Part shown: one piece after another, positions 35,295-54,347 of the stretch
Layout of the letters: every line of letters starts with the position of its first letter
Position numbering within the stretch: position 1 is the stretch's first letter
Assembly (NCBI RefSeq): GCF_037042905.1
Contig: NC_087250.1
Coordinates: 1,612,001-1,676,000 of the forward strand
Source of the DNA: Lytechinus pictus
Taxonomy: Eukaryota
DNA: 64,000 nt
Reading direction: 5' to 3'
Notes under the pieces: model-generated
The model's input: only the letters and a program-made list of their open reading frames with translations
What the model was told of the DNA's origin: nothing
Database searches by the model: none
Program-made: the position numbers and the translations under genes

Positions 35295-37528
35295 TTCATC
35301 ATCACCATCATCATCATCATCACCATCACCATCGTCATCTTCATCANNNNNNNNNNNNNNNNNNNNNNNNNNNNNNNNNNNNNNNNNNNNNNNNNNNNNN
35401 NNNNNNNNNNNNNNNNNNNNNNNNNNNNNNNNNNNNNNNNNNNNNNNNNNNNNNNNNNNNNNNNNNNNNNNNNNNNNNNNNNNNNNNNCAGTATGTCTCA
35501 TGTATAAGAGAAATACACATAATTTCCCAAATATATGTTTATATTGTGCATAAAAGATTGAACCAATTTGCGGTTTGATTTTGCTATGGAACCATCAACA
35601 TCAATCAAAGACGAATTCTTATTACATAATGATAGTTTCATAACTATAAAAAAAAAACCTGAACTATTTACAGTATTACATTTCAAAACAAATATTTCTT
35701 ACGCAAGGCTTACAATTCTTTATGTAAATAAGGCCAAGATGAATAAACATTTATTTTACATGGTTCTGATATTGATCATTATTGTTAATGGTCTGATTGA
35801 AAACAGATATTCAAAAGCAAATTGTTATTTTAAAATTCACCGTTTTCAGTTATACTGTACATAGTGGGTCTGCCTTTCATAAAGGTTGTTTAAAAAATGG
35901 CTGAATATATTTCGTGTAAATACAATGATTTTATCATAACTTTATCAAGTGTTAGTTCACTGGTTTCTCAGTATATGAATTATGTCAAAATATATAATTT
36001 TTTTCTCGAATAAACATTCTATTGAAAAACCATGCACAACTTTTAACCCTCTCAGTAACGGTTTTAGCAAACTCAATTGACCTACTGCACATAGACATGA
36101 CTATACAGTATATTAAGGGATCGATGTATATTGTTGAAACAGATTCTACTCATCATCTTCTCCCTCCTTTCTTTCTGTCCAATCATCTTACATTTATCTT
36201 CCTATTAGCCCCCGTGCGCGCTCTCTCTCTCTCTCCATGCCAGTCAACCATGCAACATAACATAAGCATGTGAAATATCCATGTGTCCCCCTTTAATAAG
36301 TATTGTGCATATTTATGTTCCATATCTGTATTTGCAATTAGCAGTCGACTTGGCGCGCCAAGTTCCCTTAATCTTATACGTTATTTATTTTATATACACC
36401 GTTGAATTCATGAAACCTTGTATTATATTTCTTAGTTTATTTTATAAAAGAATGATGCTAAAAGGAAAATATATTTAAGGAAAACGCTCTCGGCCAGTAT
36501 TTGGGCTAAAAGTGAATATTTTTTACACGACGGGGTCCCTTATGTTTGCACTTAAAAGGCCAAAATTAATAAATCTACATTGAATCGTATTCCAATCAGT
36601 CTTGTTAGTGTTTTGCTCTTAGTTTGTTCGCTGATAGAAACCTAATTGCTATTAGGATGGCAAGTGAAACAAATGAGATTGAAACAGAAATGTGACACCA
36701 ATGTTTAAATTAGAAGTCTGACAGGCTCATGGCACATTTTTATGGAAGTAATTTAAACCTTGTCCATAAAAAGAATGCATATTTCATTCGCTAAGTGAGG
36801 ATTACCAGTCCAATTGAGAGAAAATGATTCCAATCTGTATTGATTTATATCTATTTGTTCAATTTTACGATAAATCTATGGATTCTTGTACATTCTTGAA
36901 TTAAGTTGTTCAGCCACTGCACTCAGTAGAATCTGATCAATGTCTGCACCTTCAAATCGGAAGTGTGTTTGGTTATCTATCTTTCAAATACCAGAAAATA
37001 TGGAAATATAAAATATGGCATTATGCCACTATGACTTTATTTATTTTGATTTCTTTTTATTTCTGCATTCACAACGGTATCAGAATGTCAAAATATACAA
37101 AGGTATTATATAACAAAACTGTAGTATTAGTCGTAATATAAGTTGTGAAAATAAGTATTACAAGATGTATTATACATTTTGCAAAGCAATACTTTCTAAA
37201 GGAAATCCATCGTGGCGTGTAGGCTTGATGATGATGATGACGGCTCGTCATATTTTATGCAATATGACCTCGCCAATAATATTTTCAACCAATGATATAG
37301 ATACATATTTCCATATGCCTGATACATGTTCTTGGATACGGGAGTTTTGGGGTTTATTTATGTTTTTTAAAGCAATGCCTATTGTTAACCGTGATGTGTA
37401 AAATGGATCAGAGTTATTAGGTCTTATTAGGCCTCACTGCTACAGATATTTAAATTATCCAAAGATGGTATTGTTCTGGTCAGTGTGTCTCATATTCATC
37501 ATAGTGAATGATCCCGACATATCATCGT

Positions 37529-38107
37529 CTAGAATGTGAGTCGCTTTTCGAAGACAAGAATACTGTCTCCATCAAAAGCAATTATCTTGCCTGATGATGA
37601 GATCATTACACGAGATAATGAAAGGTGATATCGCCTAAGCTTTACAGTCCATTGATCAGTCAGTCTAGTTGATAGAGGGAATGACGTCACTCTTCTCTTC
37701 TTCACTTCATTCCCACTCATCACCTGATCAATCACACACGTCTTGCGCTCATCATCTGATGTCACAACGTACAGGTCGTCTGTTATAGGATCAACACAGA
37801 CATTCAAGATGACATCACTGTGGGGGATTTCCCTTTGACCACCCTGTCTGTCTATGATTAGTACTCTCTTACCAAGCGGGTAAGGTTGAGCGATGATGTG
37901 ACCTGATGATAGCACACCTCGCATCAGTACTTTCTGTTTACATTTGATGGTATTCACGATCTTACTATCAGCTGGGTTGATGACGTATATCTTAGACTGA
38001 TTCCACTCAGCAGCGATGATCATCCCATCACGGTCAACAGCTACATCCACCTTTGAGGTATCGCGCGTTGTGTTTCTTGGTATTGTGACGTCATTGATGC
38101 GCATCCA
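37529..38107 (-). pseudogene. TRIM-like gene copy 2, only the C-terminal ~192 codons of the beta-propeller remain
   Basis: WMRINDVTIPRN...VFEKRLTF open frame, closely similar to copies 1 and 3; N-terminal part not found elsewhere in window. Confidence 0.88.
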
Positions 38108-38477
38108 CTGTAAATACATAATGCATTCTAATCAATCATTCTATTCTATACAATGTTTTTGAAATATAGTCATAGATTAAAGTTTCAACATAATTCTCTA
38201 CTGCATGTCTATTACAGAGAACAAAAAGGTGACCTACTTCAGTAAAGCCATTCGAATCAATTTTTTGTTTAATGCTATATACACTCTTATTTAATTCTAA
38301 GTTTAATTCCCAAGGCAAGAATATATTCTTAGATTGCAAATAAAAAATATAAAAAATAATAGAATAAAATAAGATGAATAAAACAAATTAAAGACCCCAC
38401 AAGCTCTGTATACATAGAATTCAGTGTACACTTCTCTACTTCTCTACTCCGAGATTGAGAGGGTATTTAGAGTGGAT

Positions 38478-41400
38478 CTAACTGAACTTATTGTAATTTG
38501 AGGGGCTACTTAATATCCACTGATTTTTTACACATTGTATATTGAGTTTGAGGTCATCGTTGTAGCCCCTCAAATCTCTTGAAATGTTGTTGAGTTGGCA
38601 GTGGACCGACTCTCCCCCTTGTTCACCCATCATCCCAAGGCTTGCTCTCCAGTCTCTGAACCAGGGGATGACATGATACTGCAATAGATGCTGTTTGGGG
38701 GTCACGCTCTCTGTGGGGAAGTTCTGACGGTAGAACAACATATACTCTTTGATGTCTTTGTCTGTCAGTAAATAAACGATACAAAAAAAAAAAATAGAGA
38801 TCTATAAATGTTATTTTCTAGTAATATTTTTGCTTCTTCAGTGTCAATTGATATTTTCTTGCTCTGTCACTCTTTATTTATTTGATATGAAAATTACTTG
38901 CATTTCATTTTTTTTTTGCAGCTGACCTTTATGATCATGATCTCTTAGACTCTTACCCAGCTTGTCGATGACTGAGTCGTCCAGGAAAGTACCCGTGTTT
39001 ATACCCCGGTGGCATGCCCCGAACAGCTTTAGCAAAGTATTATACTTGCTGGCTATCTCTTCTGCCTTCTGGATGAGGTCCCGGTCGTTGGGGCAGAGTG
39101 ACTGTACCTTCTTTGATATAGCAGCAGTGATCAGATCAGTGTTCTCAGGCTGTTGGAACAAGGTACACGAGGATAGGTTCAAAGTAAAAGGATAGTGACA
39201 TTTACTATTAGAATAAAGTGGACATTAGGCAAGAAGCAAACATCTAGAATTTATATTTTCTTGTATTATTCAAAAGAAAGACAATGTGAATTACTATAAT
39301 TTGTGTAAATATAGTAGTATATTTCAGGAATGTTCTTACTTTTCATGATATACTCTACTCACCTGTAAACATTTATGTACATGGTTCCCTACAAATGAAC
39401 GACCATGGTACGCCTGTCTGCTCACTCTCAACTGCTGTAGTGCTTCTTCTAGACCAACATTAGTTGGTCCAGAGTGAACTGTCATTTCTGGTATTTTGCC
39501 TATTTCCTTCTCCTACAAATAAAAAAGAGATTTTATATGTTAAATTTTATATTAATTTTAGTTAAAGATGCATTTGGTACATCTATACATGATTTAAGAT
39601 TAAAACGTATGCAACTCGTATTTACAATACTGCCAGTGTGACATCCAAGATACTAACCAGTGTAACTTTCTCTCTCTTCTTCTCTTCAGCCATTTCCAGG
39701 ATGAGGGTGGGCGGTTCAGCTTCAGGGTAAAGAAGTCCAACCATTATGTGCTGGTCCATGAGGTCGTGGAGTTCTTCCTCAGCAAGCTTCAGTCTTGACT
39801 GGAGACTCAGCTTCTTCAGCTGCTGTTTGAAGGCCTCTTTTGCTTCCAGTTGGTCTGTAGGACTTTTTGCCAAGGACTGGCCAATCTCCAGGTCCAGAGT
39901 GTGACATGCTTGGCAGAGCGAGTTGAAGTGCTTCAAGAAGACCCCGAGGGAGATATGGAGCCCAGGAGGACAGACCTGATAAATAAGAGAAAAGGGCTTA
40001 TAATATCAGAGGTATTAATAACAATTTTCATTGTCATCATTGCAGATGAAATTAAGATTTCACTTTTGAATGTTCTGAATGTTTGTCTTCCTGAGGGGTT
40101 TAAAGTAGCTATAACCCGATAAGCATAAAGGTCTGTGGTAAGATACAGATCCGATTACACACCCACCCCACCCCTGGTGAGAGTTATATTCTGGCTACTG
40201 ATTAAGCATTTGGCTATTGAAATCATTTTTTTCTTAAATATCTTACCCTATTTATTGGAATGTCAAAGAATGGGGATCTGATGACGTTATTAGATTCCTT
40301 TGGGATGCCACAGGTTTTGAAGTGGTTCAGGGATTCCTTGAGGGTCTGCAGGCTTCGCTGACGGGGGACAGCCATTGGTGGGTCAGCCATTTCCTTCTTG
40401 GTCATCTCACAGTAGAGACAGCAATGACGGCCTGGTGAAGAAAAAAAAAATGGGGATACAAGTCAAGAGAATTTTTTTTTTTTTTTTTAATTACCTCTAT
40501 TCAATCAAAATAATATATATGTATATATAATGTTTATGAAAGTAAGGCTTACCATTGGGGCCAGTGAGTCCATACATGCGGGTCAGATATTCATAGTCGC
40601 CGAAGGCAAAGACTTTCATGGTTTTCCCTCTGTATAAAGACAAAATATGAGATAGACACAATAAAATTCACATACCAAATAACTACATTCACATTAGAAA
40701 TCTTACTCATTGAAATTTTATAGGTTCTGGTTATCTTTTTGATTTTTATGGATATTAATATTTTATTCAACAGAAGAAGAAAACACACCGCCATGACATT
40801 GACTCCAAATCAGCAATTTGGCATCTAATGGTCTCCAGAGAGACATCGAGGTTGTAAGTGGAGTCAGATCCAGGGAACAACATGATCACCCGGGTGTTGT
40901 GGAGGCTATTGGGTCGCTTCACATTGGCCAATTGCACCATTAGCTTGAAAGTTCCTCCCCCTTTGTCGCCTCCCACTTTCAACCAAATTTCTCCTTCGGG
41001 GATGTGGTCGTCATGCCAGGTGAGCTCTCCAAGTCTGTAGATATGTAGAAATAGGATATTATTGCATTATTCAAAGGGCTATTTAATTTGATTTAAATGG
41101 GTTTAATTAATAAAATTATATTACCAGAATAAAATCATAATGCTTCTGAGGATAAGGAATAGATATCAATATCAGAAACACTATGGCCCAAATTCACAAA
41201 GGAGGTTTAAAACTCTCTTGTGAATTCATCCCTATCATTTTTTTTGTAATTGGTGCATTCAGTAATCATTTTTAATGATATTTAAAATATCTTTCTTCTT
41301 TTGTTATGTTAATGATTTGCTTTAATGGTTTTGTTTACATTATCACAGGTAGAACTCACCGATCATATTCCTCTAGTAAGTCCTTGACAAGGGCACTGAG

Positions 41401-42159
41401 GCTTCTTACTGTTACTACCGGGGTCTCCTTAATTTCCATGCCAGTCTCACTTGAGCCTTGTTGGAGAGGCAACAGTTCCCCGGTAATGTTGTTTTTTACC
41501 ACATCATCTTGGAGTCTCCTCACTTCCCTCTCATTTCCTGTAGAAATTCTCCGTTCTTTTAGCCAGATGTTAAGAAATATATTTAGGTATTGTATTTTTA
41601 TTGTATTAATGACTTAATCTAGTATGAGGTGTAATTCCTGGTGGGGTGGGGGGGGGGGGGGAATACTCATCTTATAAGGTATATGGGGATATGTGCCACT
41701 CTAATGGGTCACTTTTTTAAAAGAAATCCCAAAGCATGGGGTAATGTTTTGTGCCAGAAAACCTCCAAAACATGGGTAACTTTATTGTTAAGAATGATAT
41801 TCTCGCCCGTATATATTCTCGTCGTTTGAGAATATCATTCGAGATGCAAAAGTGGTCTTTACAAAAAAATGAAATCCCTTTTAATTGGTACCCTGTAAAG
41901 GTGCTGTGGATAAGTCAAGGGAATGTGAACCACGAGATCTGGGGTTCAAATCCCACCACAGTACCAATGTCCTTTAGCAAGATATTAATCTACATTTGCC
42001 ACACTCGACCCAGGTGTTGTAAGTGGGTACCTGGTAGGATTCATTCCTTGAATGCACTGAGATCTGTATAAAGGCTCCAGGGGCTAAAGCCGGGGTAAGA
42101 ACATCCAAAGTACTTTAAAAGTCCATAGAGACGTATCATGTGATGCAAATGTTGAGCAG

Positions 42160-42213
<54 letters not shown>

Positions 42214-44247
42214 GTTATTATTATTATTATTATTGTTATTATTATTATTCCTTTCTGACTAAATGACCCATTAAATTAATAAGTATGGGTATGAACTCTT
42301 CAGCTGCAGATCCCCGTCCAAACCAAATCTGAGTACCCTATTCCGGGGTGTAATTACATGAATGTCCATAACAAAGATTGTTCAAGTCACCTCTTCAAAC
42401 GTCGTAGCTTTCTCCAACTCAAGCTGAAGAAGCTTTTCAGCTCCATAATGTCTCTTGATGGAATATGGAGGGGTTGTGGGCCCAAGATCCCTGTGATGCT
42501 TGCAGATTGGGAAACTTCATGTTGCTGTTGAGTATCGGCTGCCTCTCTCCCACCAGAAACCTCTTGCCTTACATGATGTATTATTGACGTTCTTTTACGG
42601 AGGGTGGATGATGAACAGGTTGTACTTGGTACGATGCTGCTTGGAATTTTGAAAGCTCTCATAGGCTGTAAGAATATATAGATGGCAAGTTACCGCTGAA
42701 GTTTCATTTTCAAAATAACATTATATTATTCAAGATAATGGTGTAAAATTATTAAAATCTTTTAGAATACATGTATATCTAATGAGGATTCAACATACAG
42801 GGTTGTGTATCTAGAAAATAGTTAAACTATAGCAATTAAATGATATCTATGACTTTCTAGAAATCCATGTTTTCTTTTGTTATTTTTAGTTTTGTTTGGT
42901 GGGGGGGGGGGGGGGGCAAAGTTTTGTTGTTATACTTACATGATATATGCACCATTATGATTATTTTATTTGTTTCTTATACTGTGAACTAAAATACATT
43001 AATGGCTAATTTCTTTACAGTATGAAAACTTAAATGTATGAAACTGAAATTATATATATAATATGTATATAATAAAATACATATTTACTAATATTACTTG
43101 GGTAATATATACCCAATCATTTGCCTTTATATGTGAATTCAACCTGATCAACCTTGCATAATTCAAATCTACTGGGACTATTGAAATAACTTTTTTAAAT
43201 GTTGAAACTTCTGAAATAAATTTGACTGACAATGATAAAGAGAATGATATATTTTGAGACCCTAACTTGTTCGTCTTCCACAAAATCTTCTGCAAGTTTG
43301 AAATATGTGATGATGATTGTTACTTTAAACTACCGGTAGCTAGGAGATAAGACTTTTGCATTTACCTTTCCACGACCTGCTAAACCTATGCTGGCTGACA
43401 TACCATCATGTGACTTGGCCATCTGACATTTGAGGTATTCAGAGGCTATCTGCCGGCGTTGTTGGGTGTTGAGGTCCATTTGCGTACATTTTGCGTATGT
43501 ATGGTCACAGTTTACACGAGTATGACACGAATGGCCTGATGTTTGGGTGTAGTGAAGGGATGTTTTACAATGTGAACACTGAACATGAAGATTTTGTAGT
43601 AATGTGATGATGTATGCGGCTGGTGTGTGTGTTTGAGAATAATGAAATTGAATGTTACAAAGAGGACAGCTAACAGACACTTTGACAAAGAGAGACGATA
43701 TACAGTCAAGACAAAACAGGTGGTTACAAGGTGACTCGACAGGACATGACACAACAGACCTACAAACACAACACAAAAGGAATTGTAGTGAATTATCAAT
43801 GTGAAATGTGTCTTGATTGATGTTGTATTTTTGATTGTCTGTTGTTCCTGATAGTGATAGGCCTACTCCTAATTGAGAAAAGTGAGACTGGGGTGTTGTT
43901 GTTGCAGGGGGGCGGCCACCAGCTTTTCTTTTCTTTGGTCTGCCTGGTGTTTGTGTTTCTTTAAAATGTGTACATGTATGACAGTGTGATGTTCTCCTAT
44001 GTGTGTCCCAGTTTTTTGGTGTCCAATGTAATGGTTTCTTGATTGTGAGATGGCAATAGCATGTGCTGCAAAATTTGTTTGGGTGTATATCTAAAGTGTC
44101 CTCTGAAATGTCAATATTAAATTTCTCTAGAATTATCTGATGGTAGGTTGATACACTATACGAATGCCCCTTCTTTCCCAATTCAGTTATAACCCTCCTC
44201 CCACAAAATCTACACAACAATGACAAACACTTAATATGCTGTTCCAT
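38478..44247 (-). CDS. 10-exon RAG1-like (Chapaev/N-RAG-TP-type) DDE transposase with N-terminal zinc domain and RING finger, ~938 aa
   Basis: Exons 44247-43366, 42665-42391, 41566-41360, 41034-40789, 40629-40553, 40431-40247, 39975-39658, 39512-39363, 39149-38957, 38761-38478 (2817 nt, phases all compatible, GT-AG except the exon-3 acceptor AT). Motifs: HxxxxxxxCRFCG...DxxxxHPxxFCxxC...WxxH..CxxC; RING CCVC..CNHLFCLDC..CPLC; IWLKVGGDKGGGTFK; FGDYEYL..GL.G..GRHCCLYC; PPGLHISLG; FVGNH; TPKQHLLQYHV; GEQGGESVH. Confidence 0.9.
41898..42249 (+). mobile_element. tRNA-derived SINE with long (ATT)n tail inside transposase intron 2
   Basis: ggggttcaaatccc B box, tcctttagcaagatatt core, tgggtacctggtaggattcattccttgaatgcactgag shared with SINE at 47286; (TTA)n 42161-42249. 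Confidence 0.8.
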
Positions 44248-44749
44248 GCATTTAAATGTGTGTACAGTACAGTAAGAACAAATAAAACCACCACACAAGG
44301 TCAAAATCAACAACACAAGATGAGTGCACAAAAAACTGTAGGATAGCTAGAAATGAAAGACAGTTTAAACAATACCAGTCAATTTTGATATAAAACCAAA
44401 ACAAAGGTATGAAAAATTGTAGATTGGTAATATTTTTTTTTAAAGAAACCTCATAAATACTGATAATATTGACTGTGATATCCTACGAGTATATGGGACC
44501 GACACACCCCGCTTGCCGCCGGCTAATTCAAAGTTGATTGCCGGTGTTTTGATTTCTTGTTTTGAATGTTACCATTGTTTTCTACGAATGTATGTGTATC
44601 ATATATTTGATTTTCATTACAAGATGAGGTTGGCCACCTCTCTGGGGTTTCCCCAAATGAGCTAGATGTGAGAGCAATATCGCGCAAAGCGTCAGTAGCA
44701 ACCCGGTAGCAACAAGTTCGAGTTTCGCGGGGGTATTTAAATTTTAAAG

Positions 44750-46380
44750 ATGAGTGAGCCCTCTCTCGGTCAAGACGCTATACATATGCATAGGGAGCTT
44801 GCACCTGCATTCACATACGTGCCATTTTCAGTAATTAAAAATGTAAGGTGGCTGCAACAGCCCCATCCCAAAGGAATCCCTGATTTCTTCTTCGCTCAAA
44901 GTACACATGATAAGTTTTGACATGATTTTTTTGGTATTATTCAGGTCATTGCGGATGCCAAGAGATATGAAAGTAGTCACCCAGCAGGTGTAGTATCTCG
45001 ACTAAGGCCTATTAATTCAAAGCTGCCACGATTTTTAGATGAACAACGGGAAGGTATCGGTCGAGATGACACGTCAGTATCACCAGCTAGAGGCCGTAGA
45101 GGCATTCAATCCTCTTCAAGTCAACGGAAGAATCCAAAGGAACGACAGAAGCGACATCATGAATCAACAACAAAGACTATCAGAGGACAAGGGAGACAGC
45201 GATCAAAGAGTGAAGGTGATACTGAGCTGAGGTATAAATACAGTTCATAGATTCATTTATCTTTAAGTATGAAACAAATGTTTGCGGCAGGAACGATATC
45301 CAGCATTTCATGGAAGTGAATCAGCTGTCTGATTAACATATTATTTTATCTGATATAAAGATCTGATTACCGGAGCAGTCAAGATGTATAAAGATGGACC
45401 TTCTTGTCTTTCGCCTCTTGAATTGTCAGGTTTCACACTTCATAACCTCGTTTAGTGTTGTTTCTTCTTTGCCGTTATCTCATATTCTTAATTTATTGTA
45501 ATGTATTTTTGTCCTCTCTTGCGGCATCTCCAATTGCGTATTTTGGTGGATCTACCTTTCCTTGATACATTTTTCAATGACAATAGTGCTCTTACTATTT
45601 CATTGTTATTTTTGACGAGTCGGTTAAGTCGGTTTGCATAAAGAAAATAATTCAATTACTTTCATATTATACATGCCGAGTCTGGTACTGATTTTAATGC
45701 TTCGTATTTCTTGCAGATCCTCGGAACTCACTAAGCTTCCTTCTATCAAACAAAAAAGTTCAACAAAACCCAAGACGTTCTATGAGATAGCTAAAGAGGA
45801 GCAAAATGTCAGAGAAACAGCGCCCTCTGCGTTGGATCTTATATATCGTCAGTTTGGTGCAGTCAAAAAGGTAAGATTGATAACCTCTTTCTCAAATTAG
45901 GTCGTATTTCCCCCCTCCCTCATACCAAGGTGACAACCCTGATCAACGGATAATTCATCGAAACAGATAAAAATGCTGGTTTAGAAATGTTTACGTCTTT
46001 CGACCTCGGACTGCGAGAGGTTTCTGTTTACCTATTTGAGGAAATAAAAAAAAAACAAGTAATGCGCTAGTCACACATAAAGTTTCTGAATCTACGTGAA
46101 AATAGCCGTTAACACCGTAATTGATATAAACATAAATGGAATTTTTGACAATGTTCATAAATTTGTAAAAGTATAAAATTTGAATTGTATATAGTATATT
46201 TTAATTTTCATTCTGAATAACTTAGAAAAGTTGGTGATGATTGTAATCGTAAACTTGTTTATGTTTTTTTTTTCACAGATGAAGGCCAGACGTCAGTATA
46301 GTGAAGACGATTATAAGAAACTGAAAGACATGCTTAGAGCTCAACAAAAACGATACATCAGATATAAGATAAACCTTTAA
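44750..46380 (+). CDS. Predicted 4-exon gene, ~211-aa basic Arg/Lys/Ser-rich protein of unknown function
   Basis: Exons 44750-44842, 44945-45231, 45717-45870, 46279-46380; all GT-AG, phases 0/2/0 compatible, no stops: MSEPSLGQ...VIKN/VIADAKRY...EGDTELR/SSELTKLP...FGAVKK/MKARRQYSEDDYKKLKDMLRAQQKRYIRYKINL*. Confidence 0.65.
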
Positions 46381-46796
46381 ATAGAGTTTTATAGACCATG
46401 GCCCTGGGAAGCAAACTGAAAAAGAAAATAATTGGTTAGTCATACCTATACATTCTGAATCTACATGAGAATGGCCTTTTGAATGTGGTTTGAATGTCGT
46501 TTTAAAGGGATGATCCGGGCTGAAAGTATTTATATCTTAAATAAATGGAGTAAAATTTAAAGAGCAAAATGATGAAAATTTGATCAAATCGGAAACAAAT
46601 ATTAAAGTTATTGAATTCTAAAGATTTGCGTTATTCCGGTGAAACAGTTCCAGGAATGTCTTTATGAATATTCATTAGGTGGACAGTTGATGTCACATCC
46701 CCACTTTCATTTATTTCATGTTATTACATGAAATGATATTTTTTTTTCATTATTTCACAAATGTATAAATGATTTGTCTCTTTTATAATGAAATAG

Positions 46797-46915
46797 GAAA
46801 GCCAGGCGTCAGTACAATAAAGACTATTATAAGAAACTTAAGAATATTTTTAGAACTAAGAAAAAGCGATACATCAGATATCAGATAAACCTTTTAGATA
46901 GATTTTCAAAGACCC
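46797..46915 (+). pseudogene. Degenerate duplicate of the last exon of the 44750-46380 gene
   Basis: KARRQYNKDYYKKLKNIFRTKKKRYIRYQINL vs KARRQYSEDDYKKLKDMLRAQQKRYIRYKINL; in-frame acceptor missing. Confidence 0.8.
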
Positions 46916-47285
46916 CATTACATTATGTGATTTCCCGTGATCCTATTTTATTTTCATAGCTACAGATCACACGAATCTTACATGTACTGATGTAAGTATT
47001 ATTTTCACTTATCAAATACACCCGATTCAGATTGCTCCTGTGACAATTTCTCTTGGCTTTATTTTGTCTTATATAGGGTTAGTGTCGCAATGGGTTTTAT
47101 GTTAGGTTTAGACGAAGGTTTATGATAGGGTAAAGTGTTATATCCAGGGTTTAAGTTGGCAATTCCATTAGTGTGTATCATTCACAGCGGAGTAAATGTC
47201 ATGGAGCCGGTCAAAATAACCAGTTGGTGAACATTTATCTGACTGATTAAATCGATCAGTATCAAGCAACTGACTCTACCATTGT

Positions 47286-47585
47286 GGAGCGCTGTGGCCC
47301 AGTGGATTAGTCTTCTGTCTTTGAAACAGAGGGTCATGGGTTCGAATCCCACCCATGGCGTAATTTACTTCAGCAAGAAATATATCCACATTGTGCTGCA
47401 CTCAGCCCAGGTGGGGTGAATGGGTACCCGGAAGGATTAATTCCTTGAATGCACTGAGCGCTGAAAGGAAGCTCGAACTAAAGCCGGGTGATTATAATTA
47501 TAATAAACAATGCACCTCAGAATAGATAATTTCCAGATAGATGGTGGTATATCAATGCCTATTATTGTTTATTACTATTATTATT
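47286..47585 (+). mobile_element. Near full-length tRNA-derived SINE
   Basis: gtggcccagtggattag A box, gggttcgaatccc B box, ttcagcaagaaat core, ATT-type tail. Confidence 0.85.
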
Positions 47586-47803
47586 TCTTCAAAAAGATCT
47601 TTTCATTCCAAATACCCATTCGATCTGCAAGATAAAGTATTAACATTAACACAACAAAAACTCAGAAGAGCATATCCAGTCATGACACTACATGATTGTT
47701 TGTCAAATCATAATACTTCAAGATTTATGAAGTCAAAATATGAAGAGTTTAAATGCAAAAATGGACTAAGCCCACTTTTGCTCATTTTTCACAAATCAAG
47801 TCA

Positions 47804-47934
47804 ATTGCAAACTTCCTTTCTAGTGAGGGCGATATCCCAGAACTTCAAATTAGAGCACCACTTCCAGATTCCCACTTTAGGTGATGTTCCTTCAAGAAGC
47901 TAGCGAGGCCTATTTGGTGTGTCTATTTGAAAAC
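47804..47934 (+). pseudogene. Histone H3 pseudogene fragment (histone-fold region)
   Basis: With two frameshifts reads KLPF / LVRAISQNFKLEHHFQ / [18 protein letters not shown], matching H3 KLPFQRLVREIAQDFKT(D/E)[25 protein letters not shown]. Confidence 0.85.
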
Positions 47935-49439
47935 GACGTTTTTATAAAAAAAAAACGTTTCCATTCACGAGGTTCTATGTTTTAGCGTCATCAGTAAATG
48001 TACCAGAAATCACAATAAAAATTACCTCTGGATTTATTCAATTTTATACGAGCTTTTGATATTCATTAATATCATTTTCATCTAATCCCTTTTGTAATAA
48101 AATTGATTTAAAGTTGTTGCTCTATCAGCCAAATTTTTCTAAATATAACTACGTAAGGGAAGAGAGAAGTACCATCATGTTAACGTTATACCTGGTATTT
48201 ATTTGTTACCAATCGGGACTTTTCATGTAGAACATCGGACTGAATTCAATATACTTATAAAAACCTATAAAATATATTACATTTTCAGGATCTTTTTAAC
48301 TGTAATTTTTGTTACCTAAGATTCTTAAACATCGTGGAAGAACTTCTAATCTATGGAAACATAGATTTGTGAAGGTATGAAGAATAAGCAAAAGACGATT
48401 TAGTCCCTTTCGCATGAAAACGTAAATTTCATTTCCATTTTTAATGGAATTCTTGAAACTTTTTGGTACTTGGACTTCGATGTATCTGATGCATATCGTA
48501 AAAGTCTTTTAAAAAAAAAACGCACATGAGACCTTTACTTTAAGTTGTCAATAAAAATGTCATAAGCACAAACGAACCTGTATTGTGTCGTCTTGTCTTT
48601 TTGTCTTTTTTACAACATTCTTGTCTGATAGCAATTAACGCTTCAAAATAGGCGACATGTAGTTCAACTCATACAAGCTTTATGGTATTATTTGTCACAA
48701 CAACTTGCATGTTCACACTGGTAGTATTGATAATTTTCGTAGACACACCATTACATGAAGAAATATGAAAATATGCTTGCACCATAAATCATATACAGCA
48801 ATCTTTACAGTTGTAACATGATTAAATACAATACAATGTCGGGCATTTTTTTCAATTTGTTTTTCTTAATTTAACGCTGAAAACTATCTTCTTCGATCAC
48901 CATTGCGATTTCAAGGCAAACTAAAGATGCTGCCCTCTTTGAAAACAATCTAAACATTCTCGTAATTATTTTTTGCCTATGACGTCAGGCACATCACTAT
49001 AATAACTAAACTTAATTTCTAACACATACATAGGCATTTACTTCGATTAAAACAGTTAACTAGATAAATTGAAGTTATTAATCTGGCATCCAGAGCAAGC
49101 GTAAGTAAGAACCCTAAATCATAACAGAGGTTATGGCAAAATATTGGTCGCCATACTGTGGTGTACAGGCGGGATGGTTACCATACTATCACATTCTAAG
49201 CTGTAAGTAATAAGTTTTCCTAAATACAATGTGACTTGCCACCTCCAAACCAACAATAAATAACAAAAAGTTTGATTATTAAAGCTTGATAAAGCACATC
49301 ATTAACTTTGGAAATGATATGTAACTTGTCGAAATCCATCAACAAGAAGTACTTGTTTGAAATGTAGAAGAATTTCAGCGAGAGGTTTAAAGAAAAATTA
49401 AGTAGAAATAAGGTTTAAAGTTCGGGGGTCACTCAAAGA

Positions 49440-50458
49440 GTTTTCCTTTAAGATTTGCTTTTGCATTTTTAATGCATTTTATGGACCGAAGTTATGGAAC
49501 TCACTTCATAATGATATAAGAACTGCAAAATCTTTGAACTCTTTTAAGACTAAATTCAAATTATCTCTATTAAAATCTTACAATATACTCCCAAGTTAAG
49601 TCTAATTCATCATCTCTGTCAAGTCATCATTATTTCTATAAAGACTATAATTAAAACATAAAATAATCATTATCCTTTTTTTCATTGAAAAAAAAATCTG
49701 ACACAAGTCCTTCTCAGATGTGCTCGTTATACATTTTTGTGTCCATCCTCTCCTCTATTTTCTCTTTCTTTCCTGTCCGCTTATCCGCCTTCCTCCTGGT
49801 TATTTGTTTACGGCATCAATCACATTTTTCGTGCATTATATTCTTTCCAGGTATTTTATATATTTTTCCTCCTTTTGTACACATCATTGAATCCAGTTTG
49901 CTTGAGTCTACGATGGCATGTGTTCTACCGACGTTCAGCAGCACCCATCCATCTTCTCAGGGCATTCTCCCCTTTTTTCTTCTCTTTTTCTGCAGGGGGG
50001 GGGGGGGGGGAGGGGGGGTGGGGAAGGGTGGATATATTTTAGGACGGGTTGTTTTGTCCTTTATCAAACTATATTTTTCATAACTTCGTATTTATTTTGT
50101 GAGTATTTTTTCTCTCTCATTTATTTTTTTTCTCATTTGATTACATATATCTGTATTTGTACTTTGTTATTTTGTTATTTGTTGTGTTATCTATTTTTTG
50201 AGGGGCCCACGTTGTACAAGCATTGCTTTTTAGTGGGTCCCTCCATTTCCATCCTAATTTAATTTCTATTGAAAAAATAGTATACATATTTAAAACCTAC
50301 AATGTGTTGCCCAAATTGTCTAAGTGTTTTTTTTTTCAAAACATACGTATTATAATTTTTTTTTTCAACGGATACATGTATTTATGTTTATAAATGGTAA
50401 ACAATTTGTTTTTGTTTGATGGAAGTGAAATAAATAAATTTGAATTTGAATTTGAATC
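49440..50458 (+). mobile_element. 3' fragment of a CR1/L2-type LINE
   Basis: GPKLWNSLHNDIRTAKSLNSFKTKFK C-terminal ORF2 motif at ~49483-49570, T-rich UTR with gaggggcccac...gtgggtccctc stem, aaataaataaa(tttgaa)n tail. Confidence 0.7.
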
Positions 50459-51488
50459 TACCAAATTATTTTTATTTATCATTTCCCTCGATTCGAATCC
50501 AGTCCGATTTGCAGGTGAGTTTTGTTTTCACAGTCAGATTTCACACAGTAGTTGATGAGTTACCCTTGCGGGATTGTTGGAGAGAAATTAATATCTTAAT
50601 TCTAGCCTTGTTCACCCAACGAATGAATTCTTCTGACTTATTGGTGGTATTTGGATGACTGAATAATGACAATAATAATAATGATAATAATATTAACAAT
50701 GATAATAATAATAATGATTTCATTTAGATTAGATTTAGATTTATTTATTTCAATAAAACAAACAAATATAATCGAAGTAATAGTAATTATTCAAAACAAT
50801 AAAGACAGTTTAATGACATTTTATTTTTATTTTATAGAAGATGAATTAACTGAACGGAGGGATTTGCTAAGAAAAGCAATGCTTGTATAAAAGGCACGTC
50901 CCTAACTTAGTTTCAATACTAATCGACAAATCTATATACAATAATGGAGACGGTAAAAACAAGTAATCTATAAAAACAAATCAAAATAAAGAATAAAGGA
51001 ATTGATTTAAATGATGACAATAATGATAAATTCGAATTATAACAATTTAATAAGGAGAAAAAAAAAGAGGCAAAGGAAAGAGGATGGAGAGAAGGATGGT
51101 GCAAATAAAGATGAAAATAAAAAGAATAACATTGCAGGTTCACATGTAATTATTTAGAATATGTTTATAATATTTGACATATTTATTGGTAATAGTAATA
51201 ATAGTCAATGATAATAGTAACAATAATAATAATAATAACAATAATTATAATAATGATAATAATAATAATTATAATAATTGTATTTTAATGATAATGATAA
51301 TTATGATAATAAAATGATAATGATAATGAAAATAATAATAATAATAGTAATAATCATAATGATAATACTTTGATGAGGAATCATCTTGGTTATACCAAAA
51401 AAAGATGAGGTAGTAGGCTTTACAATGACAGGTCATCTGTGAATTATGAGTAGGACAGGATAAGTCAAAGATGATTATCGCTTTGACA

Positions 51489-53766
51489 ATCTTGTCATAT
51501 GATTCATCATAAGCAATATCATGTTCGAATGTAAATCTTGTCATATGATTCATCATAAGCAATATCATGTTCAAATGTAAATCTTGTCATATGATTCATC
51601 ATAAGCAATATCATGTTCGAATGTAAATCTTGTCATATGATTCATCATAAGCAATATCATGTTCGAATGTAAATCTTGACATATGATTCATCATAAGCAA
51701 TATTATGTTCGAATGAACTATTATTAAATCTTGTCATATGATTCATCGTAAGCAATATCATGTTCGAATGTAAATCTTGTCATATGATTCATCATAAGCA
51801 ATATCATGTTCGAATGTAAATCTTGTCATATGATTCATCATAAGCAATATCATGTTCGAATGTAAATCTTGACATATGATTCATCATAAGCAATATTATG
51901 TTCGAATGAACTATTATTAAATCTTGTCATATGATTCATCGTAAGCAATATCATGTTCGAATGTAAATCTTGTCATATGATTCATCATAAGCAATATCAT
52001 GTTCGAATGTAAATCTTGTCATATGATTCATCATAAGCAATATCATGTTCGAATGTAAATCTTGTCATATGATTCATCATAAGCAATATCATGTTCGAAT
52101 GTAAATCTTGCCATATGATTCATCATAAGCAATATCATGTTCGAATGTAAATCTTGCCATATGATTCATCATAAGCAATATCATGTTCGAATGTAAATCT
52201 TGTCATATGATTCATCATAAGCAATATCATGTTCAAGATTTATATTCGAACATAATATTGCTTATGATGAATCATATGACAAGATTTACATTCGAACATG
52301 ATATTGCTTATGATGAATCATATGACAAGATATACATTCGAACATGATATTGCTTATAATGAATCATAATGACAAGTGTGATCATGATAGTAATAATAGT
52401 AGTAATCATAATGATAATACTTGGATGAGGAATCATCTTGGTTATACCAAAAAAAGATGAGGTAGTAGGCTTTACAATGACAGGTCATCTGTGAATTATG
52501 AGTAGGACAGGATAAGTCAAAGATGATTATCGCTTTTGTCTTTGTGGGACGCACTTAAGTCAGAAACATCTTTTCCAATCAGGTGAAAGTTTTTTTGTAA
52601 CTTGAATTGAACATCTAATAATTGATTTGTTGATTTATTCATATATTCTGATCATGGGTGCCAGATCACTTGGGGGGGGGGGGAGTTGGGAAGAGATATA
52701 TCCCCCAATATTTCAGGTGGGTGTGGCCTGTGTTATCATCCCCAAATAATTTACGTTCGGACATGATATTGATTATGATGAATCATAAGACAAGATTTAC
52801 ATTCGAACATGATATTGCTTATGATGAATCATATGACAAGATTTACATTCGAACATGATATTGCTTATGATGAATCATATGACAAGATTTACATTCGAAC
52901 ATGATATTGCTTATAATGAATCATAATGACAAGATTTACATTCGAACATGATATTGCTTATAATGAATCATAATGACAAGATTTACATTCGAACATGATA
53001 TTGCTTATAATGAATCATATGACAAGATTTACATTCGAACATGATATTGCTTATGATGAATCATATGACAAGATTTACATTCGAACATGATATTGCTTAT
53101 GATGAATCATATGACAAGATTTACATTCGAACATGATATTGCTTATAATGAATCATATGACAAGATTTACATTCGAACATGATATTGCTTATAATGAATC
53201 ATATGACAAGATTTACATTCGAACATGATATTGCTTATAATGAATCATATGACAAGATTTACATTCGAACATGATATTGCTTATGATGAATCATATGACA
53301 AGATTTACATTCGAACATGATATTGCTCATAATGAATCATATGACAAGATTTACATTCGAACATGATATTGCTTATGATGAATCATAATGACAAGATTTA
53401 CATTCGAACATGATATTGCTTATAATGAATCAGAATGACAAGATTTACATTCGAACATGATATTGCTTATAATGAATCATAATGACAAGATTTACATTCG
53501 AACATGATATTGCTTATAATGAATCATAATGACAAGATTTACATTCGAACATGATATTGCTTATGATGAATCATATGACAAGATTTACATTCGAACATGA
53601 TATTGCTTATAATGAATCATATGACAAGATTTACATTCGAACATGATATTGCTTATGATGAATCATAATGACAAGATTTACATTCGAACATGATATTGCT
53701 TATGATGAATCATATGACAAGATTTACATTCGAACATGATATTGCTTATAATGAATCATAATGACA
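51489..53766. repeat. 46-bp minisatellite in two opposite orientations
   Basis: Unit aaatcttgtcatatgattcatcataagcaatatcatgttcgaatgt: ~16 copies 51489-52234, reverse complement ~3 copies 52235-52375 and ~22 copies 52750-53766. Confidence 0.95.
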
Positions 53767-54347
53767 AGTGTGATCATGATGATAATGGAGGAGTATATGA
53801 TGATCATGATGGTAATAATAATTGTCGTATTAATGCATGATGATCATCTATCTGTTTTCTCCCTATATTATTATGTTTATTGTTATTGAGTGACACAATT
53901 TTTTCAGGTCTTAATTCGAGTCTGTTATTTACCCGAACAATGAACGTCGATCGACACTCATGGTCCTGATAGAAATATTCCCCCCCCCACACACACTTTC
54001 CCTCTCTCCATTGCACTAATCTCCCCCATTCGTTATTCCTCATCTCTGTTCTCCATCTATATCTATTTCTCTTGTTGACTCTCTCCTCATCACACATTCA
54101 CTCACACACCCACACACACCTCTCTCTCCACTCTAATAACATTATCCTCTTCCCTCCTCCTCGCATCCCTATCCTCCATCTATATATGTTCCTCTTGTTG
54201 ACTTCCTCCTCATCATACGCGCACACACACACATCCACACACACACACACACACACCTCTCTCTCCCTCAAATCAATCATCTTTCTCTTCTTCATTTTTC
54301 TCTCTCTCTTTCCCTCTGTATAAAATGTGATATGAATGATCATAAAA

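What the first reader, a model, noticed from the sequence alone, without database searches (positions are those of the whole stretch)
44247..46380. Orphan 4-exon gene head-to-head with the transposase: a possible two-gene module
Seen: a phase-consistent GT-AG gene model starts 503 bp from the transposase ATG on the opposite strand; the spacer is locally CpG-richer (44497-44730). The protein is small, basic and low-complexity with a helical-looking C-terminus, and is not RAG2-like (no kelch repeats or PHD). The ORF track shows only pieces of it. Inference: it may share a bidirectional promoter and be an accessory or cargo gene of the element, or an unrelated host gene brought in by the same rearrangement.
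Basis: partly seen in the sequence, partly recalled or inferred. Interest (0 to 1): 0.72.

Follow-up and report, generated by a model that had tools for sequence, protein, structure and literature searches.

The report
Gene fragment beside a transposon end
The "orphan gene" is the last three exons of an ordinary sea-urchin gene for a cyclic-nucleotide-binding protein, left headless next to the end of an inserted transposon, and it is not a partner gene of the transposase.

Summary
The two-gene module is refuted. The transposon ends at window 44821. Two other copies, 99% identical (contigs C15 and C7), stop at the same base and have unrelated flanks with 4-bp target duplications.

They recur in at least eight paralogous units on the same contig, none beside this transposon end. 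They are better conserved than their introns. They match, junction for junction, the last three coding exons of RefSeq models in Lytechinus pictus and L. variegatus. The full-length paralog (891 aa, "cyclic nucleotide-binding domain-containing protein 2-like" family) has cNMP-binding domains. The window holds only its residues 709-891.

"Exon 1" (44750-44842) is 72 nt of transposon end plus 21 nt of host intron. Its frame depends on a 1-bp insertion found only in this copy.

Compared with an intact unit, about 13.6 kb of host DNA and the left 2,452 bp of the 9,169-bp element are missing. The left junction shows 3-bp microhomology. The element looks Chapaev-type: CAC...GTG ends, 4-bp duplications, a RING region most like RAG1's.

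A chimeric transcript is therefore unlikely but not excluded. This scan has notes on this same window only, none from other DNA.

The parts
38109..44821 (-). Truncated copy (right 6,713 bp) of a 9,169-bp Chapaev-type DNA transposon. It holds the transposase gene and the right terminus. The left 2,452 bp, including the left terminal repeat, are missing.
   Evidence: 99.0-99.1% identical to C15:25651885-25658601 and C7:22900540-22907220. Those two copies stay homologous to each other for 2,452 bp further left; ends CACGTAATTT... and ...CACATACGTG, with 4-bp target duplications ATCC (C15) and GGTT (C7).
43330..44247 (-). First coding stretch of the transposase, with a RING finger and a region like the RAG1 N-terminus.
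   Evidence: zf-C3HC4 E 1.8e-4, and RAG1_imp_bd E 4.5e-3, which is below the Pfam cut-off; the best solved-structure matches are RAG1 (3jbw E 1.6e-7; 6oem residues 146-364 aligned to query 31-231).
44497..44730 (.). CpG-richer segment. It lies wholly inside the transposon, between the transposase ATG and the right terminus, so if it is a promoter or 5' UTR it belongs to the element.
   Evidence: CpG observed/expected 1.08 against 0.40 for the element. (element boundary at 44821).
44750..44842 (+). Most likely not an exon.
   Evidence: junction; the host part is only 85-100% conserved, like intron; in the C15 and C7 copies the same ATG reads a different frame after codon 13, because this copy has a 1-bp insertion; shuffle controls.
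44822..44944 (+). 3' remainder of the host intron that the element inserted into.
   Evidence: in the intact copy L002 the same sequence lies inside a 494-nt intron between the long exon (donor at L002 1129/1130) and the next exon.
44945..45231 (+). Host exon, the third from last coding exon of a CNBD2-like paralog (about residues 713-807 of P0009).
   Evidence: 96-100% conserved without gaps in most paralogs, with AG/GT kept; the same junctions in RefSeq models; tblastn 97% identity.
45717..45870 (+). Host exon, the second from last coding exon.
46279..46380 (+). Host last coding exon, with stop TAA.
36159..38111 (-). 3' part of a TRIM/NHL-like paralog, cut off at the left junction. 38109-38111 (TGT) is microhomology shared by the TRIM paralogs and the element interior.

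Best explanation
The stretch is a junction between two unrelated things, not a gene.

Host side. Positions 44822-46380 are host DNA: the tail of an intron plus the last three coding exons (residues 709-891 of 891) of one copy of a tandemly repeated sea-urchin gene. The full-length product has cyclic-nucleotide-binding domains followed by a long disordered, charged tail (RefSeq: LOC129263605; family named CNBD2-like).

Transposon side. Positions 38109-44821 are the right 6.7 kb of a 9.2-kb Chapaev-type cut-and-paste transposon.

Inferred history. The transposon inserted into that intron. A later deletion, joined at 3 bp of microhomology, removed its left 2.45 kb together with about 13.6 kb of host DNA. 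The lost host DNA comprised the 5' four fifths of the CNBD2-like gene, the intergenic spacer and the 5' part of the neighbouring TRIM/NHL-like gene.

Consequences. The remaining three exons have no start of their own. The fragment is most likely a young, non-functional gene remnant. Its exons look intact only because the whole unit is still 98-99% identical to its paralogs.

Shown: the boundaries, the copies and the identity of the exons. Inferred: the order of events and the lack of function.
For: Element boundary
- the match pattern breaks sharply at 44821/44822. 44250-44821 matches only C15 and C7 (99%). 44822-46400 matches eight or more places on C6 (87-99%).
- the element boundaries, terminal repeats and 4-bp target duplications. 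There are three different flanks at the right end.

Exons 2-4 belong to a host gene
- exons 2-4 are conserved at 90-100% and mostly without gaps. Introns in the distant paralogs are 75-89% identical with many gaps. AG/GT sites are kept.
- RefSeq proteins of L. pictus and L. variegatus carry the same exon junctions. The contig length 28,517,652 equals that of C6.
- P0009 has cNMP_binding, E 1e-19.
- tblastn finds only residues 709-891 of P0009 in the window. A reference unit has residues 183-891 in order.

Deletion
- the colinear reference unit gives a gap of about 13.6 kb and TGT microhomology at the left junction.

Exon 1 and annotation
- the exon 1 frame is not shared by the other element copies.
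- no database protein corresponds to the window copy.
Against: - No RNA evidence could be obtained.
- The ATG at 44750 is in phase with a good GTAAGG donor and with exon 2. Only 3.5-6% of shuffles give this when a GTRAG donor is required.
- Exons 2-4 of this copy have no stop or frameshift.
- The order of events (insertion, then deletion) is inferred, not observed. The left junction was not checked against reads.
Confidence: 0.86

Rival explanations
1. Chimeric transposon-host gene. Outward transcription from the CpG-richer right end of the element starts upstream of 44750. The ATG at 44750 and the intronic GTAAGG at 44843 form a new first exon spliced to exons 2-4. The product would be a 211-residue protein with 31 new residues fused to the basic C-terminal tail of the CNBD2-like protein.
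For: - The model is phase-consistent with a good donor. With a GTRAG donor required, only 3.5-6% of shuffles produce one.
- A copy-specific 1-bp insertion puts the ATG in frame.
- Exons 2-4 are intact.
- There is a CpG-richer segment just upstream.
Against: - No read evidence.
- No such protein among the database relatives of 105-334 aa, nor in the cluster of the family.
- The intactness of exons 2-4 is expected from the 98-99% identity of the whole unit, introns included.
- The model was found by looking for one, so the shuffle figure is post hoc.
- The tail alone has no recognisable domain.
Confidence: 0.07
2. Two-gene transposon module. The small gene is an accessory or cargo gene carried by the element and expressed from a promoter shared with the transposase.
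For: Only the head-to-head arrangement, the 503-bp spacing and the CpG-richer spacer.
Against: - Exons 2-4 lie outside the terminal repeat, which ends at 44821.
- Both other element copies have unrelated flanks there, with their own target duplications.
- The exons occur at least eight more times, never beside this transposon end, and belong to a larger host gene.
- The left 2.45 kb of the full element shows no ORF above about 100 aa.
Confidence: 0.01
3. Assembly artefact. The left junction at 38108/38109, or the whole arrangement, is a mis-join in a repetitive tandem cluster. The real locus would then hold a complete CNBD2-like gene with a complete element in its intron.
For: The region is a cluster of 87-99% identical units, which is hard to assemble. 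The junction was not checked with reads.
Against: - The right junction is an exact transposon terminus, so it is a true insertion.
- The left junction joins two unrelated sequences through only 3 bp of shared letters. That is typical of end joining, not of an assembler collapsing repeats.
- Even if it were true, exons 2-4 would still be host exons outside the element.
Confidence: 0.05

Closest known systems
CNBD2-like genes of Lytechinus (RefSeq LOC129263605, LOC129263600 and LOC129263067 in L. pictus; LOC121417567 and LOC121417903 in L. variegatus). The mammalian namesake, CNBD2, gives sperm midpiece and motility defects when knocked out in mouse (table in PMC7054227, citing Krahling et al. 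2013).
   Same: Exons 2-4 are 89-97% identical in protein to residues 709-891 of P0009 and use the same splice junctions.
   Different: The window copy lacks residues 1-708, including the cNMP-binding domains, so it is a fragment. Whether the urchin family is orthologous to mammalian CNBD2 rests only on NCBI's name and was not tested.
Chapaev transposons (CMC superfamily). The hallmarks are a 3-4-bp target duplication and 5'-CAC...GTG-3' termini (PMC4079192). Some subgroups have a Chapa domain followed by a RING finger, as in RAG1 (PMC4411706).
   Same: The neighbouring element has CAC...GTG termini and 4-bp target duplications in its two complete copies. It encodes a RING region whose best solved-structure matches are RAG1.
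   Different: The catalytic core was not tested for the CMC signature here. The window copy has lost one terminus. No second gene belongs to the element.
RAG1-RAG2 / ProtoRAG / TransibSU two-gene transposons
   Same: The transposase has a RAG1-like N-terminal region, and a small gene lies next to it.
   Different: Pfam finds no kelch propeller or PHD finger in any exon. The neighbour lies outside the element. The target duplication is 4 bp rather than the 5 bp I recall for Transib/RAG (from memory). The pairing is an accident of insertion.
Transposon-initiated chimeric transcripts (a transposon end supplying a promoter or first exon to a host gene)
   Same: The geometry would allow it: an ATG inside the transposon end, in phase with a downstream donor and host exons.
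   Different: There is no expression evidence, and the host part is a domain-less tail of a truncated paralog.

Membership tests
Accessory or cargo gene of the transposon (two-gene module) | The gene lies between the element's terminal repeats. | tested here: not met
   The right terminus is at 44821, and exons 2-4 start at 44945.
Accessory or cargo gene of the transposon (two-gene module) | The gene is present in the other copies of the element. | tested here: not met
   The C15 and C7 copies end at the same base and have unrelated flanks with their own 4-bp duplications.
Accessory or cargo gene of the transposon (two-gene module) | Homologs of the gene occur only with the transposase. | tested here: not met
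   At least eight paralogous copies on C6 match only from 44822 onward, not the transposon end. Relatives are annotated in L. variegatus.
Accessory or cargo gene of the transposon (two-gene module) | Shared bidirectional promoter or co-expression. | not testable with these tools
RAG2-like partner | Kelch-type propeller and PHD finger. | tested here: not met
   No Pfam match in any exon at E up to 1, and none in the family's proteins.
CNBD2-like gene family of Lytechinus | Sequence identity and identical splice junctions with annotated members. | tested here: met
   89-97% protein identity to P0009 residues 709-891, with the same junctions as in the RefSeq models.
CNBD2-like gene family of Lytechinus | Cyclic-nucleotide-binding domains are present, meaning a complete gene. 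| tested here: not met
   P0009 has cNMP_binding at E 1e-19. tblastn finds none of residues 1-708 anywhere in the 64-kb window. It is a fragment of a member, not a complete member.
Chapaev (CMC) transposon, for the neighbouring element | 5'-CAC...GTG-3' termini and a 3-4-bp target duplication (PMC4079192). | tested here: met
Chapaev (CMC) transposon, for the neighbouring element | Chapa zinc domain followed by a RING finger (PMC4411706). | tested here: inconclusive
   The RING finger is clear. The region before it matches RAG1 residues 146 onward only weakly (E 6.9e-5 for the combined stretch; Pfam RAG1_imp_bd is below its cut-off).
Chapaev (CMC) transposon, for the neighbouring element | DDE core with CMC-specific residues. 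| not tested
   This is outside the finding. Two core pieces gave no PDB match.

The most novel reading that the evidence does not exclude
The truncated CNBD2-like paralog has been rescued by the transposon. The CpG-richer right end of the immobilised Chapaev-type element would act as an outward promoter. Its ATG at 44750, put in frame by a copy-specific 1-bp insertion, plus an intronic GTAAGG would form a new first exon. The result would be a very young chimeric gene expressing only the basic, helical tail of the protein.
Probability: 0.06. Interest if true: 0.35.

Novelty: not a real feature. Interest (0 to 1): 0.1.

Why it matters
It matters mainly as a correction. A RAG1-like transposase with a divergently transcribed partner would have been interesting for the origin of the RAG1-RAG2 pair, but here the pairing is an accident.

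The exons belong to an ordinary host gene family, and the transposon is a single-gene Chapaev-type element. The element boundaries set here (38109-44821, with the complete element being 9,169 bp) also correct two other notes on this window. The "CAC terminus" near 38100 is TRIM-gene sequence. The "16 kb of foreign sequence" is 6.7 kb of transposon followed by resident host DNA.

The case also shows how a transposon insertion followed by a deletion can leave a gene fragment that passes a phase-consistent GT-AG test.

Tried and rejected
- RNA support. The look-up of sequencing runs listed runs. X1-X4 hold 20-25% of the sampled words, close to the exonic share of the stretch, but their kind is only guessed to be RNA.
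I sent no reference covering 43045-43084 to any search tool afterwards.
- The joined four-exon protein was never built or searched. Exons were searched one by one by reference, and natural database proteins (P0005, P0009, P0010) were used instead.
- Pfam on all four exons and on family proteins: nothing.
- The protein atlas gave only a noise-level lead (score 0.76, TEX33).
- PDB searches with two transposase core pieces: nothing.
- The fold of P0010 had low confidence (pLDDT 46.6), so no fold search was made.
- A second gene in the missing left 2.45 kb of the full element: no ORF above about 100 aa.
- I first took the exon 1 donor to be 44848/44849 after misreading the ruler. The correct donor is 44842/44843.
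- The large protein-representative search was not used, because the word search had already found the family.
Full report
**What is at the coordinates**

An ATG at 44750 lies 503 bp from the minus-strand transposase ATG at 44247. The four phase-consistent GT-AG exons are:
- 44750-44842, donor AAT|GTAAGG
- 44945-45231
- 45717-45870
- 46279-46380, stop TAA

I first misread the exon 1 end as 44848 and corrected it. The spacer 44497-44730 has 13 CpG, observed/expected 1.08, against 0.40 for the transposon and 0.68 for the window. Counted exon by exon, the product is basic (net about +20 over 210 residues) and serine-rich. No exon has a Pfam match, so there is no kelch or PHD.

**The boundary that decides the question**

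I searched the window's own genome with 44250-46400. The match pattern breaks sharply at 44821/44822.
- The left 572 bases match only two places, on contigs C15 and C7, at 99%.
- The right 1,579 bases match eight or more places on the window's own contig C6 at 87-99%.

Local BLAST of fetched flanks shows that window 38109-44821 is 99.0-99.1% identical to C15:25651885-25658601 and C7:22900540-22907220. Window 44822-51484 is 98.3% identical to C6:1383858-1390528.

At 44821 the three copies share the end ...CACATACGTG and then run into three unrelated flanks. C15 and C7 remain homologous to each other for a further 2,452 bp on the left. The complete element is therefore 9,169 bp. It starts CACGTAATTT... 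and is flanked by 4-bp direct repeats, ATCC in C15 and GGTT in C7.

So the element ends 124 bp before exon 2. Exons 2-4 are outside it, and the other copies do not carry them.

**What exons 2-4 are**

In the paralogs on C6, exons 2, 3 and 4 are 90-100% identical to the window and mostly without gaps. The introns of the more distant copies are 75-89% identical with many gaps. The AG/GT sites are kept, and the frames are open in five of seven copies.

In an uninterrupted copy (L002), the sequence equivalent to 44822-44944 is the 3' part of a 494-nt intron. A long coding exon precedes it and ends ...KKFLVK|GT in phase 0.

A word search with that long exon found RefSeq proteins of Lytechinus pictus and L. 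variegatus.

The cluster of the best hit contains an 891-residue protein, P0009 (LOC129263605, L. pictus). It is encoded on a contig of 28,517,652 bases, the length of C6. This identifies the genome as L. pictus. P0009 has cyclic-nucleotide-binding domains (Pfam cNMP_binding, E 1e-19). An N-terminal fragment model of the same family is named "cyclic nucleotide-binding domain-containing protein 2-like" by NCBI.

There is also a diverged duplicate of the last exon at 46798-46893. A reference unit shows residues 183-891 in order.

The "orphan" is therefore the C-terminal fifth of a CNBD2-like paralog.

**What exon 1 is**

Exon 1 consists of the last 72 nt of the transposon (44750-44821) plus 21 nt of host intron.
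- The host part is no better conserved among paralogs than intron.
- The donor GTAAGG is intronic in every intact copy.
- In the C15 and C7 copies the same ATG reads a different frame after codon 13, because the window copy has a 1-bp insertion there. The frame is not a property of the element.
- In-phase ATG-to-GT models of at least 60 nt upstream of exon 2 arise in 78% of dinucleotide shuffles with any GT donor. With a GTRAG donor they arise in 3.5-6%. That is mildly unusual, but it is a post-hoc figure.
- No database protein corresponds to this copy.

**How the arrangement arose (inferred)**

The region C6:1.22-1.82 Mb alternates CNBD2-like genes on the plus strand with TRIM/NHL-like genes on the minus strand.

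A colinear reference unit (C6:1432000-1461999) aligns with the window up to 38111 on the TRIM side and from 44822 on the CNBD2-like side. About 13.6 kb lies between these points in the reference.

At the left junction the TRIM paralogs read ...CCATTGTCTG... and the element interior reads ...TATATGTAAAT.... The join therefore has 3 bp of microhomology, TGT.

The simplest history is this. The element inserted into the intron. A later deletion by end joining then removed the element's left 2,452 bp, the 5' four fifths of the CNBD2-like gene, the spacer and the 5' part of the TRIM-like gene. One breakpoint lies inside the element rather than at a terminus, so a transposase-made adjacent deletion is less likely.

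The "CAC" at 38106-38108 is TRIM sequence (CAT in the paralogs), not a terminus.

**The neighbour**

CAC...GTG termini and a 3-4-bp target duplication are the stated hallmarks of Chapaev transposons (PMC4079192). A Chapa domain followed by a RING finger, as in RAG1, is described for two Chapaev subgroups (PMC4411706).

The first coding stretch of the transposase has a RING finger, and its best solved-structure matches are RAG1. I did not test the catalytic core. The left 2.45 kb of the complete element has no ORF above about 100 aa, so the element looks like a single-gene one.

**What could not be done**

There is no read evidence for or against a transcript that starts in the transposon end.

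I sent no reference covering those places to any search tool afterwards.

The joined four-exon protein was neither built nor searched. I used single exons by reference and natural database proteins instead.

A single-sequence fold of the natural fragment P0010 had low confidence (pLDDT 46.6). It was mostly disordered, with helices in the parts that match exons 3 and 4.

**Verdict**

Exons 2-4, the spacing, the CpG content and the composition hold. "Orphan", "4-exon gene" and exon 1 do not.

The two-gene module is refuted.

The remaining novel reading, a transposon-started chimeric transcript, has a probability of about 6%.

Earlier notes of this scan concern this same window. I found none describing the same thing on other DNA.

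Noticed in passing
window 46798-46893 (+): A diverged duplicate of the last coding exon (69% protein identity to P0009 residues 860-891) lies about 420 bp downstream of the stop. It is present in the reference unit too, so it may be an old exon duplication or an alternative last exon of the family.
   Followed up: partly
window 51488-53768: A large array of a roughly 46-bp tandem repeat, in two blocks of opposite orientation. It is shared with the paralogous units on C6.
   Followed up: no
window 38109-44821; C15:25649433-25658601; C7 about 22900540-22909665: There are three copies of the element, 99% identical. Two are complete (9,169 bp, with 4-bp target duplications), so the family was active recently. 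The window copy keeps the stretch noted as the transposase gene (38478-44247) but has lost the left terminal repeat, so it should be unable to move on its own.
   Followed up: partly
Host DNA resumes at 44822, so the foreign block is 6.7 kb, not 16 kb.
   Followed up: yes
L002, L004, L006-L009 (C6 paralogs): Many CNBD2-like copies are decaying. L002 has a nonsense codon in the long exon, L004 and L006-L009 have frameshifts, and L006 has a GT-to-AT donor change. RefSeq gives several of them short models that start at internal methionines (for example the 215-aa P0010).
   Followed up: partly
window 44781-44795: The window copy has a 1-bp insertion relative to the C15 and C7 copies, inside the last 72 bp of the element (CATATGCATAGGG against CATATGCTAGGG). 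This is what puts the ATG at 44750 in frame with the downstream donor.
   Followed up: yes
G000:C3:30897992-30898184: A weak match (70%) to window 44571-44773, possibly a distant relative of the element's right subterminal region.
   Followed up: no
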